From Fimbriosthenelais zetlandica (taxonomy: Eukaryota), in NCBI GenBank assembly GCA_977030845.1, contig OZ365115.1, positions 11,098,001-11,162,000 on the forward strand: 64,000 nt of DNA, given 5' to 3'. Under the pieces are notes generated by a model. That model did not search any database. It was not told where the DNA came from and saw only the letters and a list, made by a program, of their open reading frames with translations. Within the stretch, counting starts at the first letter, position 1; each line of letters opens with the position of its first letter. Positions 9,729 to 16,800 of this stretch are shown here, piece after piece. Both the position numbers and the translations under genes were made by a program.

Positions 9729-11884
9729 CAAATCTAGCCTCCCTAGCCATTTATCACATTGAGTTAAAATCACTTCTAGTTACCTGTAGATAAAATGTCA
9801 TTCAGAATGGAAACATTCAGTGATGCAAATTCCAGGCAATTGGCAAATTTAAGATTTTACACTTCAGCCGGATCTAAATTACAGAAAGCTGTTTTTTAAT
9901 TTCACAGAATTTCTCTACAATGAGGAATCTCTAGAATGAGAAAGTCCATGGGCTATCAGAATGAATTAACAACAAATTGTCATTGATATTTAGAATTAAT
10001 ATTTTGTGAAATTTTCCCCCAAATATGTGATTTGTCATTGCCTGATTTGCATGGTTGGGTTGTGTACATGTATAACCCTATATCTGGGGTGCATAGGTCC
10101 ACTTGATTCAAGAGGTGGCCCTATACATGAATTAATTTTTTTGGGTTTAATATTTGTAGTTGTTGGGAAGAAAGGAATTGAGGGGCAGCTGGTGGGAATG
10201 GGCATTGCCATGGATGGGGGAAGGAGTGGGTGGCCGGGGGTCGGGTGGCGAAACGGGATTGAGTGTTAAAACTGTGACATATTCTACGACTGTGAAATGC
10301 TCTCTTATTTGATTTGATTAATGAAAAATCGCGGAAATAACAGTGAAAATGATTTGTATTCTTAAGGTTTTATATATTTTCCATGTATTCTATTTGTTGT
10401 TTTAGGATTTTCTGTTGAGGGTGTGTCAAATGTAGGTACCCGTTTCACAAGAGTAAACTAAGAGCCGATTGAGAAACAGGTCCGGGATTGAGTAGTTTTT
10501 TGGTGAAAATTAATGTATAATTTAATTGTTTAATATGACAGCGAAACTTCCCAGTGTTATGTATAGGTAGAGTGACTCTGAGTCATACTGTAGTAGTAAA
10601 GGAATATAACAGATCTGACAAACTTTCACTATAGTAACTATGATACATTATGGAGTAGAAGAAGCACAGGCAAATTACAAATAATAGTAAACACTCTGTA
10701 TAATGAATAATTTTAGGACTGAGGAAAGGTCCTGGTCCTATATCATGGAAGTGTTCCCTTATCAGATGGGGCCTCATCCAACCTCAAAAACTTGAGACTG
10801 AAAGTGCATCGACAACTTTGGGGATAATTATCGAGTGGCTAAACTTTAGGTCTTAATTTCGATGGTTTCCCATCTATTTGGCATGTTATCTTGTTGGCAT
10901 GTTTCATTCTGTTACATAAATATGTTTCTGACTTTTCCTACCTGACGGACGTAGCCTGCAGGGTTTTCTATTTCAGGATATAGCCACTCGGGTATTATCC
11001 CCTAAATGGAAGTGCTCACTAAACTGAGGTTTTTGCTGTAATTAAATATTAGAATATAATTTATACCAACCGTAAAAGGTGGTTTTCTTGGAAATTTTCT
11101 TTTGCTAATTTTAAAATATATTTAAAGACAGCATGAACATGATGTTTTTCAACTTAACTTGCTTGACGTACAATTTGCCGTACGTGAGTGATTTTCAGTG
11201 TTTATTATGATTTATATATATGACATTTCTTTTCATGAAAAAAAATCTTAATTCTTGCAGCTGTGTGTGCTCCTCACTTGCGTTTGTAAATATATTATAT
11301 AACCGATAGCTGACTATGTAAAACCGGTGATCCCTTTGAGGATTTCGATATTTTTCATTCCCCAATCGATATTTTGTCAGTTCTCTGTGTTTTTTTAATT
11401 AAAGAGATCTCGAATTAATGTAAACGTGATGTATACATCATGAATGTCTAATACTAAATACTGATGTGTTTCTAACATAATTCCACATTGTAATCTGGTT
11501 TCTAGTTCAAAAAAACTTGGGAATAGTTTCCAAATTTTACACCAGTACATTAAAAAAAATACGAAAATAATAAATATTTAGATCTCACCTCACTTTCGGT
11601 GTTCCAGGATCTGTTTTTCTTTCAATAAAATACATGTATATATATTTGAATTTCAATTCAATTTAGTGTTATATCAGTATTTCTTCATACGTTGTAAATA
11701 GATTCTCTCGCGTTCTAGGCCTTGTGATATGTTGTACACCAGCAGGACAACCGGGCAGTCAGTGGCGCAATGACAGGCGGAAGTATGCGAGCGCCTGGCC
11801 CTGGCAGCTGCGCAATGAAGCATGAGACGTAGCTTGATCCATAGAACTAGTTCTATGCTTGATAATAGCAGAATAGGTCATCCT

Positions 11885-11952
11885 TCTGCCATTAGTCTAG
11901 AGGCAAGGCACTGACATTCAACGTGAGCGACCGGGGTTCAATTCTCCGTCGA
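11885..11952 (+). mobile_element. tRNA-derived (SINE-type) Pol III head, degenerate
   Basis: ttagtctagaggcaagg (A-box-like) ... gaccggggttcaattctccg (B-box/T-arm); acceptor and anticodon stems do not pair. Confidence 0.65.
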
Positions 11953-12163
11953 TTCAAACGTTTTTCTGCTCCATGGGTCGCTCGGCCTACACATTTATTT
12001 GATGACGGTGAGCCTTCTTCAGCGACCTCACCGAGCACCCCTAGCGCCACCTGTACCACCAGGCGGGAACCAAGCTATGATAGCTGCTGCTATCTAAAAG
12101 ATCCCTTCCCCAATGAACACTACTCAGCTATATGTGTAGCGATCCAGCTGCGAAAAGGGATTT

Positions 12164-12235
12164 ACAAGACGGGGAATCGAACCCCGGTCTCTCTCGTTAC
12201 AGGCCAGTGTCTTACCTCTATAGACTACCTGGCTC
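12164..12235 (-). mobile_element. tRNA-derived Pol III head, opposite orientation
   Basis: Reverse complement tagtctatagaggtaagac...gagaccggggttcgattccccg; the 3' part matches the metazoan tRNA-Asp T-arm region. Confidence 0.7.
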
Positions 12236-12877
12236 ATATGTCTCAGCCTTACACTCCGTCAAATTTAACCTAAACCGCCCAGGACAGAGCCCCAACCTCC
12301 AACCCAAACAGTAAAGCTATTTTGGTTTCATGCTTCATTGCGCAAGTGCCCGGATCAGGCGCTCGCATACTTCCGCCGCTCCCGACTGGAATCAAGCTAA
12401 ACATGAAATAGAGGAGGGTGTCATTTTCCGTCGGACAAGGACTTGAACAATCTGTGTCACGACTCTGATTTCGAAAATGTTTAATATCTCGGCAACCACT
12501 GGGTCTTTTTAAGAAATTCAAAATGGAAAATCTTAGTTGGGACAATGTCTAGCGGGTGGTATAGGAAATAAATGCTGAAACTGCTTCTAAAAATTTCGAT
12601 TTTCAAAATGTAGCCAATTTCACAAGTTGTCCCGACTCCAGCTCCGTTTCCAATCCAAGGCTCCGATCTCAGCTGAAAATCCGGCACAGTGGCGCCCTCA
12701 GGTGGTGAGTGGAGGTAGGCCTATATGACGATTAGCGCAGAGGCCTGGGGTCTGTAGCGTCTGTTGTTAGAAGCTCTATAGTATACCAGTGTAACAAATA
12801 TGCTACACAGGGGCGCCCTCATGTGGGGGATGGTAGACTTAGGCGAGGAGGCGAAGCTTGTCCCTCGATCATTGTCA

Positions 12878-13056
12878 TAGTAGCATAGGACCAAGCCAGC
12901 GCGGCTGTAGCGCACCCGAGATATGATGCGGCAGAACGCTGAACTATGCTACTATAGTAGGCCTATTGAACTCTATGACTTCTATGGAAGGACCAAGCCA
13001 GCGCGACTGTAGCGCACCCGAGATATGATGCGGGAGAACGCTGAACTATGCTACTT
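12878..13056 (+). repeat. ~67-bp direct duplication in the spacer; first copy bounded by 11-bp inverted tagtagcatag/ctatgctacta
   Basis: ggaccaagccagcgcg(g/a)ctgtagcgcacccgagatatgatgcgg(c/g)agaacgctgaactatgctact occurs at ~12888 and ~12990. Confidence 0.8.
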
Positions 13057-13454
13057 ATCGGAGCCTTGCATTGGAAACGGGGCTGGAGTCGGGCCAACTT
13101 GTGAAATTGGCTACATTTTGAAAATCGAAATTTTTAGAAGCCGTTTCAGCATTTATTTCCTATACCACCCTCTAGACATTGTCCCAACTAAGATTTTCCA
13201 TTTTGAATTTCTTAAAAAGACCCAATGGTTGCCGAGATATTAAACATTTTCGAAATCAGAGTCGCGACACAGATTGTTCAAGTCCTTGTCCGACTGAAAA
13301 TGACACCCTCCTCTATCTCATGTTTATCTTGATTCCAGTCGTGAGAGGCGGAAGTATGCGAGCGCCGGGCCCTGGCAGCTGCGCAATGAAGCTTGAGACC
13401 TAGCTTGATCATATAGGCCTAGGCCTATACATGTAGCCTACCATTCTTCATGGT

Positions 13455-13522
13455 TCTGCCGTTAGTCTAGAGGTAAGACGCTGGACTGTAACGTGAGCGA
13501 CCGGGGTTCAATTCACCGTCAA
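13455..13522 (+). mobile_element. tRNA-derived Pol III head (second module)
   Basis: gttagtctagaggtaagacgctggactgtaacgtgagcgaccggggttcaattcaccg; D-arm gtct/agac pairs. Confidence 0.7.
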
Positions 13523-13738
13523 TCCAATCATTTTTCTGCTCCACGGGTCGCTCTGCCTACACATTTATATGATGACTGTGAGCCTTTTTCTGCGACCTCA
13601 CCGAGCACCCTTAGCGCCACCTGTACCACCAGGCGGGAACCAAGCTATGATAGCTGCTGCTATCTAAAAGATCCCTTCCCCAATGAACACTACTCAGCTA
13701 TATGTGTATACATGCGATCCAGCTGCGAAAAGGGATTT

Positions 13739-13808
13739 ACAAGACGGGGAATAGAACCCCGGTCTCTCACGTTACAGTCCAGCGTCTTACCTCTAGACTA
13801 CATGGACC
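13739..13808 (-). mobile_element. tRNA-derived Pol III head (second module, opposite orientation)
   Basis: Reverse complement tagtctagaggtaagacgctggactgtaacgtgagagaccggggttctattccccg; D and T stems intact, acceptor stem broken. Confidence 0.7.
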
Positions 13809-16800
13809 ATATGTCTTACAGATTCAATAAACACAGTAAACCTATTTTGGTCTCATGCTTCATTGCCCACCTGCCTTGGTCAGGCGCTCGCATACTTCCG
13901 CCATTCCGCCAGACCTATTTGTAGAGCCGTGACTCTGAAATGTAGACATGGGGATTGGGGTGAAAGTTGGGGGCCGGGGAGGGGTGCGGGGGGCAAAATA
14001 ATTATGAACATTGTGATTTAGCTTTGTCCGGGCGGTTCAAATATGAAGGGGTGTAGGCCTAGTGTTGCCGAGGGTAGGGGGTCATCGGAAGGCATAACAA
14101 AATTCAGGTGCCCTGTGGTCATCGTGGTGACTTGAGGGCACCACAAGATTCCCACCAGTATGGATCTGGCCAAAGGTTGTGCCATTGGGGTTGTTTTTCT
14201 CCCATCAAAAGAATGTTAAAACATGATTTTTTTTGTATAAAATATTTTATTACCGTACTTTTTTCCCCTTACATATTAGAAACAATGTCCTACAATGCAA
14301 TGGAATGGTTGCTACATTTAGGCTAATATTATTTGCAACTATCACTACTTGGCCAAGCCTATCTATGATCTATCTAGCCTATCTCCTACATTTAGGCCTA
14401 CAACAAAGATATCATTAGGCTACAAAACATGTTTTTTTTTGTTTTATTACATGCTCACCACCTGGCCGGTGTTTTAATTCCTAAATGAGATTCTTCACTT
14501 GTTTTCAGCCAGATCTCTGTTCAAAGTGATTAGACCTTTAGTGAATTCAAGCATAAGCCTAATTTAAATATAGAATTATTAGATATAAAGTTGGCCAGTG
14601 CTTCAATATATTGAGGCATAACATTACTTCTTCGCTGTAGGCTAGCCTACGAATAAACGAAAAAGAGACAAATGGACTATTTATCAAATAAAAACATTCA
14701 AGAAAATCTCCATACTTCTCATGGATTTCCCTATCCAAAGTTCCTAAAATATAAAAAAGATATCCTAAATAATATCAAAAAAACATATTATTCCCTAATA
14801 GAAGAAATATATATAATCTGAAATAGGGTCAGGCCTAATATGTATAATTAGTTGCAGTGAGGCATAAACATAAATTGGATGCTAGAGTGATAACTTAAAA
14901 ACTCGACTCATTGAAACATAAAAATTAATTCAATTTTCAACATTGTCTTAATTTAAGTGGATGCGAGAGTAACAATAGTTTTACTTAAACGCTCCCTTTA
15001 GAGTTAGAAGTTCAGTGAAATTTCCTAACAGAGTCGCCCAACAAATTGAGATATGGGCTTATTGTACTAGGAATACAAATTCTTAGGTGCTTGGTGCAAA
15101 TACAAACACACTGCATCACAAATTGCTTCCTAATAGATTGTCAAACCTAGTATTGTCCTAAGGTTGGTTCACTCAATCCGCTGTCATTTCCCCTCATCCT
15201 CCTCTCTACCATTTTGTATAGATTATATACTGGCTAAGATATTAATGTAAAAGTGCTCATCTTCCTACAATACCAACTGATTTTGCATTCACATATTTGA
15301 ATTATAGAGATATGATCACAATTGATAGGAAAGACAAAAACACCACTTTGTATCCACGTTTATATCTGCCACATCTTTAATTACGAAATGTTATATGAGG
15401 AAACTTCAGAACTTTTCATTTCAGGAAACTTCAGGTTGCTTTGGTAGTTGATTTGATATCTTGGAATGTGGTTCTTATTCTTTCACCATCCAAAGTTGAT
15501 TTAATAAAGATTTGGCAGACTTTAAGAAGTACAAATGTTCAATCGATTTACGTGCACATGTCTTGCTTAAATACAGTAACTTCTACAACAGTATGCATGC
15601 ATTCCATTTCAACGCGCTATTAAATTGCTTCCTTGTACATTTCCTAGCCCAGAATCTCATTAGCCAAATATACCTGAACAATTTGGTTGTAGCATCTCTA
15701 GAAATATAGGTGTCAAAAATACATTATCTTTTACCCATTATCTATGCCTTTATATCAATTTATTATGATGGCCCCAGTTGTTTTTTTAATATTATTTTAA
15801 CATCTGTGATTTCCAATATACTTCATGGTAAAATCTCGTGGCAATAGATCTACTATATTATTAAGACTGGTTTTATGTACATCAAACTTGTCCACATAAA
15901 ACTGTGCACTTTGCTCACAATCACAACATTTTAAGCCTGTTCACATAGGACCGATAAAACACATCATATCTTAGATATGTGATGAGAAGGTGTTATCACC
16001 GAACCATTACTTATACTCAAGAACTGGAATTATTCCTAAAGTTCCACAGTTTAGTAATCCACACAAGTTTTTGTTTCAGTTACGGTTAGGCCTCTAAATG
16101 TTATTACATTCACACACGTGGGTATATTATACACATGTGCATATATATGAATCAGTATAGGATGTATGAATAGTCATATCTATGTACACATTTCTATTAT
16201 AATTACTCCCGATTTAGCACTGCAAATCAAGTACATCATGATCATATTTACATTAGGAATACAAACGATTCAAATAAATTCGAAGAAAAATATCATTTGA
16301 AGACTTTTAACCCATATCAGGATAATTCAACCAAGTATAAGTTTTTCATGAATATGAATAAACTGATGAATATACATAATAATATCTACAAAATAATTTT
16401 GTTAGAAACAGCATTGAATGCCTTGACGTTAAAGACATTCAATGCAGCGTCATCACCTCGAATGACACTAATATAAGAGAACTAATATAATACACATAAC
16501 TGAGTTAACAATGCAATTAATGGTCAACGTGGAAGCCCATGTGATTGAATTGAAAATAATTAGTCATATATACACTTTTCCAGTGATATTTTCTTCATAT
16601 ATTCTTCACATCTGCCCAGGAAACAAAGGGAATGTACATAATACAAACTATAATTCAGACTCTGGGAATAATTCCTAATAGGAACCGTATTTGTCCCCGA
16701 TTAATTGGTAGGTTAAAGATGTGGTATCATCAGAGACAAACAAGTTGTAGGAATTGGGACATGGAATTTTGATTTCAACCCTGGAAAGGACATTCAAGAA

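What the first reader, a model, noticed from the sequence alone, without database searches (positions are those of the whole stretch)
11885..12235. Convergent pair of tRNA-like Pol III promoters flanking a ~200-bp core (present twice)
Each module has a tRNA-Asp/Glu-like head on + and another on -, facing inward (11885/12235 and 13455/13808). D- and T-arms (A/B boxes) are kept while acceptor and anticodon stems are broken. SINEs normally have one head. Two opposed heads could transcribe both strands of the core into dsRNA, or act as tRNA-derived terminal inverted repeats. The layout is seen directly; function is inference.
Basis: partly seen in the sequence, partly recalled or inferred. Interest (0 to 1): 0.75.

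Follow-up and report, generated by a model that had tools for sequence, protein, structure and literature searches.

The report
Facing tRNA-like tips of foldback repeats
The two facing tRNA-like pieces are real. They are the meeting ends of inverted arms of a roughly 1,000-copy non-coding hairpin repeat that this scan has already met elsewhere in the genome, and each is followed by its own stop signal, so joint transcription of the core into double-stranded RNA is unlikely.

Summary
Four tRNA-like modules lie at 11881-11982(+), 12134-12239(-), 13451-13552(+) and 13709-13812(-). They form two convergent pairs, each around a ~187-bp core, and they are the only such modules in the 64-kb window.

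The pairs are not a special Pol III device. The module is about 71% identical to this genome's own tRNA-Asp(GTC), and about 89% identical in its 3' half. It has ~1,050 first-look matches genome-wide and forms the end of long inverted arms of a mosaic foldback-type repeat. This core has only ~77 matches and is one of at least four unrelated loops found between convergent modules.

In the window, two core units flank one complete foldback (344-nt arms, 94% complementary, around an ~87-bp satellite). The same alternating array recurs at 13 or more places on five contigs.

Each module keeps an A box, a B box and a T-run placed between the head and the core. Pol III would therefore stop before the core. 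None of the four folds as a cloverleaf, and the core shows no conserved RNA structure or reading frame. No RNA run was listed, so expression is untested.

The scan has found this family before on other DNA (several follow-ups). I rate it an ordinary repeat with an unusual tRNA-derived end module.

The parts
11716..11770 (.). Left edge of the repeat block: a 55-bp piece of another dispersed repeat. DNA to the left of 11716 is single-copy.
   Evidence: only query positions 417-471 recur (141 first-look candidates).
11776..11828 (+). X' arm segment (inverted copy of X), all that is left of a truncated arm.
   Evidence: I6/I7: 89-91% complementary to 12325-12377 and 13850-13902.
11829..11880 (.). 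Variable linker holding an 18-bp perfect palindrome and a duplicated GCTTGAT.
   Evidence: alignment against copies that lack the insertion.
11881..11982 (+). tRNA-like module A-left (tRNA-like part 11886-11956; T-run 11961-11965). Degenerate variant with a broken acceptor stem.
   Evidence: (80.8 bits).
11966..12152 (+). Core A, between the two T-runs. The outer ~35 bp on each side still belong to the inverted repeat; the asymmetric loop is about 12006-12117.
   Evidence: 77 candidates; no conserved RNA structure.
12134..12239 (-). tRNA-like module A-right (tRNA-like part 12162-12234; T-run = A-run 12153-12156 on the plus strand). Close to the family consensus.
   Evidence: 31.5 bits; 104.2 bits.
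12240..12324 (.). Arm segment upstream of module A-right (GTCCTGGGCGGTTCAGGCTAAAT type), shared with other arm families.
12324..12667 (+). Left arm (X+Y) of the complete foldback between the two core units.
   Evidence: I1: 344 nt, 94% complementary to 13057-13400.
12668..13056 (+). Centre of the foldback, with two copies of a ~67-87-bp satellite unit (12887-12953 and 12989-13055).
   Evidence: D5 (97%); 448 candidates, arrays with an 86-88-bp period elsewhere.
13057..13400 (-). Right arm (Y'+X') of the foldback.
   Evidence: I1.
13451..13552 (+). tRNA-like module B-left (T-run 13532-13536).
   Evidence: 84.4 bits.
13537..13727 (+). Core B, a direct copy of core A (94% identical, with a 5-bp insertion).
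13709..13812 (-). tRNA-like module B-right (T-run = A-run 13728-13731).
   Evidence: 28.5 bits; 101.7 bits.
13849..13902 (+). X segment, the start of a further, truncated arm.
   Evidence: I6/I8.
13942..14056 (+). G-rich arm fragment of the kind that normally lies upstream of a module, here without its module. Right edge of the repeat block.
   Evidence: 760 candidates, query 38-152; one search finds no module there; compare L028.

Best explanation
The convergent tRNA-like pair is the tip-to-tip junction of two inverted arms of a non-coding, mosaic foldback-type DNA repeat.

A ~105-bp cassette derived from tRNA-Asp forms the end of each 0.35-1-kb arm. It consists of an A box, a B box, a T-run and about 35 bp more. 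Arms are inverted with respect to one another, so cassettes face each other across a short loop at one kind of palindrome centre. They face outwards at the ends of the other kind of palindrome, which is centred on an ~87-bp satellite. The window holds truncated arm - core - complete foldback - core - truncated arm, that is, about 1.5 periods of a 1.57-kb tandem unit.

Shown: the anatomy, the copy numbers, the tRNA-Asp likeness, the terminators placed before the core, and the absence of a cloverleaf, a coding frame or a core RNA structure.

Inferred: the family spreads as DNA, by an unidentified transposase and/or by recombination and unequal exchange between palindromes. If the cassettes are transcribed at all, they give ~85-95-nt tRNA-like RNAs that end before the core.
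For: - Copy numbers: module 1052 first-look candidates, core 77.
- In 17 loci sampled by the module alone there are 27 modules. Twelve sit in convergent pairs 90-190 bp apart; the others have a free or outward-facing tip. Complete outward pairs lie 2.0-2.4 kb apart in L053, L054 and L055.
- Loops between convergent modules are of at least four unrelated kinds.
- L028 and L029 are 2.2-kb palindromes centred on module-core-module, with arms up to 638 nt at 91%. In the window, the 344-nt arms at 94% are centred on the satellite.
- The same alternating order X' T core T' X Y cen Y' recurs at 13 or more places on contigs C25, C19, C10, C21 and C38.
- T-runs are invariant in 15 core-bearing copies and in 21 modules.
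- The modules do not fold as cloverleaves, whereas the genome's real tRNA-Asp folds with a closed acceptor stem and anticodon and T arms.
- The core has no conserved structure: -7.6 kcal/mol with a positive covariation term.
- The only ORFs start at GTG, and the 5-bp insertion in copy B breaks the frame.
Against: - No ends with target-site duplications could be defined. Sequence beyond the 'free' tips is often itself repeated, for example the 'ATACGGCCTAGG...' continuation on both tips of L053. A transposon has therefore not been demonstrated, and recombination alone could explain the spread.
- A and B boxes are better conserved than the rest: 21 of 22 box positions are at least 90% conserved in 21 modules, against 57 of 74 for the whole tRNA-like part. 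About 77% of box columns are invariant, against 41% of core columns, in 15 copies. This hints that the cassette matters for propagation or for the host.
- Expression could not be tested.
Confidence: 0.65

Rival explanations
1. The module-core-module unit is a MITE in its own right, whose terminal inverted repeats derive from a tRNA. It has been inserted into, or captured by, foldback arrays.
For: L021 carries the ~360-bp unit without the X or Y arm segments. The symmetric part is ~120 bp on each side. At ~77 copies it is dispersed over several contigs.
Against: In nearly all copies homology runs on outward from both heads into the arms. No target-site duplication was seen at L021. The heads read inward, whereas the same module sits at outward-facing tips in about half of sampled cases. 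The module is 13 times more frequent than the core.
Confidence: 0.12
2. The cassettes are live Pol III mini-genes, or TFIIIC-binding sites, kept by selection. They would make short tRNA-like RNAs or act as chromatin boundary elements, and the repeat family spreads or is tolerated because of them.
For: A box, B box and T-run are the best-conserved parts across subfamilies. A TAAAT(A/T)T motif recurs roughly 30-35 bp upstream. Some copies score 42-47 bits on Rfam's tRNA model.
Against: The family consensus already has two unpaired acceptor positions and one unpaired anticodon-stem position. Double changes are few and subfamily-wide, and pairing is barely above the shuffled controls (76.3% against 72.9%). 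There is no expression evidence. Box conservation could equally reflect constraint on source copies or gene conversion with the ~148 real tRNA-Asp genes.
Confidence: 0.12
3. One reading: two opposed Pol III promoters transcribe both strands of the core and produce dsRNA.
For: Both heads have A and B boxes and face the core. T4 terminators can be leaky (general knowledge).
Against: T5 and T4 runs lie between each head and the core and are invariant. The core is an interchangeable loop. The layout follows from the inverted arms. A read-through transcript would fold on itself into a long hairpin (-145 kcal/mol, z = -9.3) rather than need a second promoter.
Confidence: 0.04
4. Two ordinary tRNA-derived SINEs that happened to insert tail to tail at this locus.
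For: Each head is at least 60% identical to a tRNA over more than 60 nt.
Against: The same junction and core recur in at least 40 scored copies. There are no tails and no target duplications. A terminator directly follows each head. Homology extends upstream of the heads.
Confidence: 0.02

Closest known systems
Foldback elements (Drosophila FB; Galileo of the P superfamily). This comparison rests on my own knowledge, not on a paper read here.
   Same: They are non-coding elements made mostly of long inverted arms. They have internal or central tandem sub-repeats, many rearranged and composite copies, and form clusters.
   Different: The arm ends here are a tRNA-derived Pol III-type cassette. 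No terminal sequences, target duplications (FB 9 bp, Galileo 7 bp) or transposase partner were found. Palindromes occur in both permutations: cassette at the centre or at the tips.
tRNA-derived SINEs, including dimeric ones such as Twin of Culex (definitions in PMC3531059; Twin is cited there as ref. 96)
   Same: The module is tRNA-derived with A and B boxes, more than 1,000 copies and about 71% identity to a cellular tRNA.
   Different: A terminator directly follows the head. There is no body-plus-tail organisation. The second head is inverted, not direct. The units are embedded in palindromes and tandem arrays.
MITEs
   Same: The unit is short, non-coding and flanked by inverted repeats, with potential to form a hairpin.
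   Different: The inverted repeats do not end the repeat unit, and no target duplication was found.
Dada transposons, which target tRNA and snRNA genes (PMC3706591)
   Same: They are associated with small-RNA gene sequence and are reported from a polychaete.
   Different: Dada has no terminal inverted repeats. It splits a target gene into two direct halves with 6-7-bp duplications. Here, whole tRNA-like units occur in inverted orientation.
Tandem-repeat-containing MITE-like elements of bivalves (own knowledge)
   Same: They are dispersed non-coding elements with an internal satellite array.
   Different: Those are flanked by non-palindromic left and right parts and are linked to Helentrons. 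No tRNA-like ends are known to me.

Membership tests
SINE (SINEBase definition, PMC3531059) | At least 60% identity to a tRNA over at least 60 nt | tested here: met
   Counted by hand on alignment A6: module L039 matches this genome's tRNA-Asp(GTC) at 51 of 72 positions (71%). The 3' half matches at about 34 of 38.
SINE (SINEBase definition, PMC3531059) | Short interspersed, non-tandem repeat with at least 100 copies | tested here: not met
   The module-core-module unit has ~77 candidates and mostly sits in tandem or palindromic arrays. The module alone is abundant (1052 candidates).
SINE (SINEBase definition, PMC3531059) | 5' head followed by a body and a simple-repeat or A-rich tail | tested here: not met
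   A T-run lies 5-13 nt after the tRNA-like part. There is no tail, and homology extends upstream of the head.
SINE (SINEBase definition, PMC3531059) | Transcribed by Pol III and retroposed by a LINE partner | not testable with these tools
   No RNA run was listed.
Foldback-type DNA element | Long inverted arms make up most of the unit | tested here: met
   344-nt arms at 94% in the window; 638-nt arms at 91% in L028; outward module pairs 2.0-2.4 kb apart.
Foldback-type DNA element | Tandem sub-repeats within the element | tested here: met
   An ~87-bp satellite of 2-6 copies lies at the palindrome centres. It is at the centre, not spread along the arms as in FB.
Foldback-type DNA element | Defined termini with target-site duplication | tested here: inconclusive
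   No matching flanks at the ends of L028, at L021, or at the block edges 11716 and 14056. Sequence beyond the tips is often repeated too.
Foldback-type DNA element | A related autonomous copy encoding a transposase | not tested
   Only non-coding copies were seen. No systematic search was possible after the script machine was lost.
MITE | The inverted repeats are the ends of the mobile unit, flanked by a target duplication | tested here: not met
   Homology continues outward past both heads in most copies.
Functional tRNA gene | Cloverleaf with a paired acceptor stem and anticodon stem | tested here: not met
   ARAGORN finds none. MFE folds have no acceptor stem. Two acceptor pairs and one anticodon pair are unpaired in the family consensus.
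Dada transposon | Inserted at a fixed site inside a small-RNA gene, splitting it into direct halves, with no terminal inverted repeats | tested here: not met
   Whole inverted modules are present here, not split halves.

The most novel reading that the evidence does not exclude
About a thousand foldback arms each carry a live Pol III mini-gene (upstream TATA-like motif, A box, B box, T-run) that selection keeps intact. The family would then depend on Pol III or TFIIIC binding, whether for its spread, as chromatin boundary elements, or as a source of tRNA-like or hairpin-derived small RNAs. That would be a DNA repeat family built around a Pol III cassette, which neither SINE biology nor foldback biology describes.
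Probability: 0.12. Interest if true: 0.65.

Novelty: new variant of a known kind. Interest (0 to 1): 0.33.

Why it matters
The finding explains a striking pattern that this scan keeps flagging: convergent or outward-facing tRNA-like units in palindromes. These are one repeat family seen from two sides, so the many notes on it can be merged. The point that stays open is why the A box, B box and terminator of the tRNA-Asp-derived cassette are the best-kept parts of an otherwise mosaic, rearranging repeat. If they bind Pol III or TFIIIC, about a thousand such sites could shape chromatin or small-RNA output in this genome. If they do not, the family is an ordinary lineage-specific foldback repeat.

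Tried and rejected
- **RNA evidence.** The look-up of sequencing runs listed no run, so read laying could not be used.
- **Scripts.** The Python machine was lost. Copy-number-wide statistics, a systematic search for target duplications and a search for an autonomous partner could not be done. Conservation figures were counted by hand from the tools' lists of invariant columns.
- **Target-site duplications.** I looked at L021, at the ends of L028, at the tips of L053, L054 and L055, and at the block edges. None was convincing.
- **Rfam.** The search on 11400-14300 gave nothing but tRNA.
- **Core RNA structure.** There is none.
- **Coding capacity.** None.
- **Covariation in the cloverleaf.** Weak and subfamily-bound.
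- **Flip-flop of the core relative to its two different heads.** Not seen: core orientation is fixed relative to the left and right head variants.
- **Families.** Dada and SINE were rejected on defining features.
- **Literature.** Searches for a tRNA-tipped foldback family found nothing.

Full report
**What is there.** Two units, 11885-12235 and 13455-13808, each have a tRNA-like segment on the plus strand and another on the minus strand, both facing a central stretch.

- The minus-strand segments match Rfam's tRNA model at 31.5 bits (full length, above the gathering score of 29) and 28.5 bits.
- The plus-strand segments match at 21.6 and 21.0 bits, over the D arm to the T arm only.
- ARAGORN calls no tRNA in the window.
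- None of the four folds into a cloverleaf, unlike this genome's real tRNA-Asp, whose fold has a closed acceptor stem plus anticodon and T arms.
- The two units are direct copies of each other (91-95% identical). Within a unit the heads are 75% (A) and 86% (B) complementary.

**The surroundings change the picture.** The heads are not isolated.

- A 53-nt inverted repeat (X'/X) brackets each unit.
- X continues into a 344-nt inverted repeat (12324-12667 with 13057-13400, 94% complementary). This encloses a centre that holds two copies of a short satellite unit.
- The block 11716-14056 therefore reads: truncated arm, core, complete foldback, core, truncated arm. That is about one and a half periods of a 1.57-kb tandem unit.
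- DNA outside 11716 and 14056 is single-copy.

**It is a dispersed family.** The genome is 447 Mb in 79 contigs.

- The whole unit gave 1,112 first-look candidates.
- Mapping the window's segments onto 30 fetched loci showed the same order (X' T core T' X Y centre Y' X') at 13 or more places on contigs C25, C19, C10, C21 and C38.
- Searched separately, the core has 77 candidates and the tRNA-like module has 1,052. The module is the common currency of the family, and this core is a minority companion.

**Where modules sit in general.** I built a covariance model from 21 modules and scanned the window and 40 loci. It found 100 modules, of which only the four known ones are in the window.

- In 17 loci chosen by the module alone there were 27 modules.
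- Twelve of these were in convergent pairs 90-190 bp apart.
- The others had no facing partner or belonged to outward-facing pairs.
- Three complete elements with outward-facing modules 2.0-2.4 kb apart were then fetched (L053, L054, L055).
- Conversely, L028 and L029 are 2.2-kb palindromes with module-core-module at the centre and arms up to 638 nt at 91%.

So the same arm occurs in palindromes of both permutations. Arms meet either tip to tip, with modules convergent around a short loop, or base to base around the ~87-bp satellite. That satellite forms 2-6-copy arrays at many loci.

**The core is one loop among several.** Convergent modules at other loci enclose unrelated sequences. I saw an 'alt1' loop (L002, L004, L016, L017, L030, and next to a single module in L038), an L046-type loop and a short L012 loop. 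Downstream of the module, homology among copies holds for about 30-40 bp past the T-run (to ...GGGTCGCTACACATTTAT) and then splits into several recurring continuations.

In the window, the inverted symmetry runs about 35 bp into the 'core' on each side. This leaves an asymmetric loop of about 110 bp, roughly 12006-12117. Twenty aligned cores give no conserved RNA structure: -7.6 kcal/mol, a positive covariation term, and one pair with a double change. The only ORFs over the unit start at GTG, and copy B carries a 5-bp insertion in the core relative to copy A.

**Origin of the module.** The genome has about 148 matches to the 3' half of tRNA-Asp(GTC), and ARAGORN confirms real Asp genes among them. 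Aligned to these, a well-kept module is identical at 51 of 72 positions, and at about 34 of 38 in the stretch from the anticodon arm to the T arm (hand count). The 5' half is much less similar.

The family consensus already lacks two acceptor pairs and one anticodon-stem pair. In 100 modules, 76.3% of cells pair, against 72.9% in shuffles. The double changes are concentrated in a few pairs typical of subfamilies. I read this as inheritance from a defective founder, not as selection on an RNA fold.

**Promoter and terminator.** In 21 modules, 21 of the 22 A-box and B-box positions are at least 90% conserved, against 57 of 74 for the whole tRNA-like part. The T-run is invariant.

In 15 core-bearing copies, about 77% of box columns are invariant, against 41% of core columns and about 19% of anticodon-arm columns (hand count).

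This can mean constraint on the copies that seeded subfamilies, gene conversion with real tRNA-Asp genes, or host use. It does not show transcription.

They lie at 11961-11965 and 13532-13536 on the plus strand, and at 12153-12156 and 13728-13731 on the minus strand. That is between each head and the core, so a Pol III transcript would end before entering it. A read-through transcript of the whole unit would in any case fold on itself into a long hairpin (-145 kcal/mol, z = -9.3).

**What could not be settled.**

- No sequencing run was listed for this stretch, so expression is untested.
- I found no defined termini or target-site duplications. Whether the family moves by transposition, or spreads by recombination and unequal exchange between palindromes, stays inferred.
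- The script machine failed, which prevented genome-wide statistics.

**Comparison with known kinds.**

- By the SINEBase definition (PMC3531059) the module passes the tRNA-identity criterion. It fails on head-body-tail organisation and on being interspersed rather than tandem.
- Dada elements (PMC3706591) split their target gene into direct halves and lack inverted ends, so they do not fit.
- The closest kind is the foldback element (FB, Galileo; from my own knowledge). The differences are a tRNA-derived Pol III-type cassette at the arm ends and a central satellite.
- Four literature searches found no description of such a family.

**Relation to earlier notes of this scan.** Several follow-ups on other DNA of this genome described the same family as foldback repeats with tRNA-like tips, at about 1,000 copies. 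My results agree and add four points:

- The 'centre' and 'tip' views are two permutations of one arm.
- This core is one of several loops and has only about 77 copies.
- The terminators sit before the core.
- The module is Asp-derived, as measured against the genome's own tRNA-Asp genes.

**Verdict.** The dsRNA reading is unlikely, and the 'tRNA-derived inverted repeat' reading is essentially right. I rate it an ordinary lineage-specific repeat with an unusual end module, of modest interest.

Noticed in passing
window 11829-11880 and 13401-13450; L018:1825-2000 against L006:1500-1630: The linker between X' and the left module collects short perfect palindromes. Copy A has CATAGAACTAGTTCTATG with a duplicated GCTTGAT, and copy B has TATAGGCCTAGGCCTATA. 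L018 differs from L006 by a 36-bp perfect palindrome plus a 7-bp duplication, GTTCTAT. These look like micro-foldback insertions, or excision remnants, of an element that makes 7-bp target duplications.
   Followed up: partly
window 11700-14100: The palindromic hexamer AGGCCT occurs about 7 times by eye (about 0.6 expected), mostly at module junctions and at both edges of the repeat block (11717-11722 and 14055-14060).
   Followed up: no
G000:C1:33259028-33312018 (also C1:32872203-32897292); L050: There is a tandem array of more than 40 units, period ~1263-1280 bp, each unit carrying tRNA-Gly(GCC), tRNA-Asp(GTC) and tRNA-Met(CAT) genes. The genome has about 148 matches to tRNA-Asp in all.
   Followed up: partly
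G000:C19:20419730-20424151 (L023, L024); C19:26632382-26634763 (L022, L025): A 2,035-bp-period tandem repeat of at least 3 units contains module-core-module plus an extra module. This is a macrosatellite-like form of the family.
   Followed up: no
window 12887-13055; e.g. G000:C27:4345615-4346115 and C25:11401338-11401767: An ~87-bp satellite (448 first-look candidates) forms arrays of 2-6 copies at foldback centres. It sometimes switches strand in mid-array.
   Followed up: partly
L021:1945-2005 (minus strand); also the right flanks of the L004 and L012 copies: Other, unrelated tRNA-like pieces (B-box-like GGTTCGAATCC / GGGATCGAAACCC) lie next to copies of the family. This suggests further tRNA-derived repeats in the genome.
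   Followed up: no
window 11716-11770: A 55-bp piece of another dispersed repeat (141 first-look candidates) abuts the left edge of the block.
   Followed up: no
L034 and L035 (G000:C25:13896000-13900000 and C25:11620900-11624900): Here the module lies in the opposite orientation relative to X-Y, with partial X copies on both sides of it. This is another sign that the module is reshuffled among contexts.
   Followed up: no
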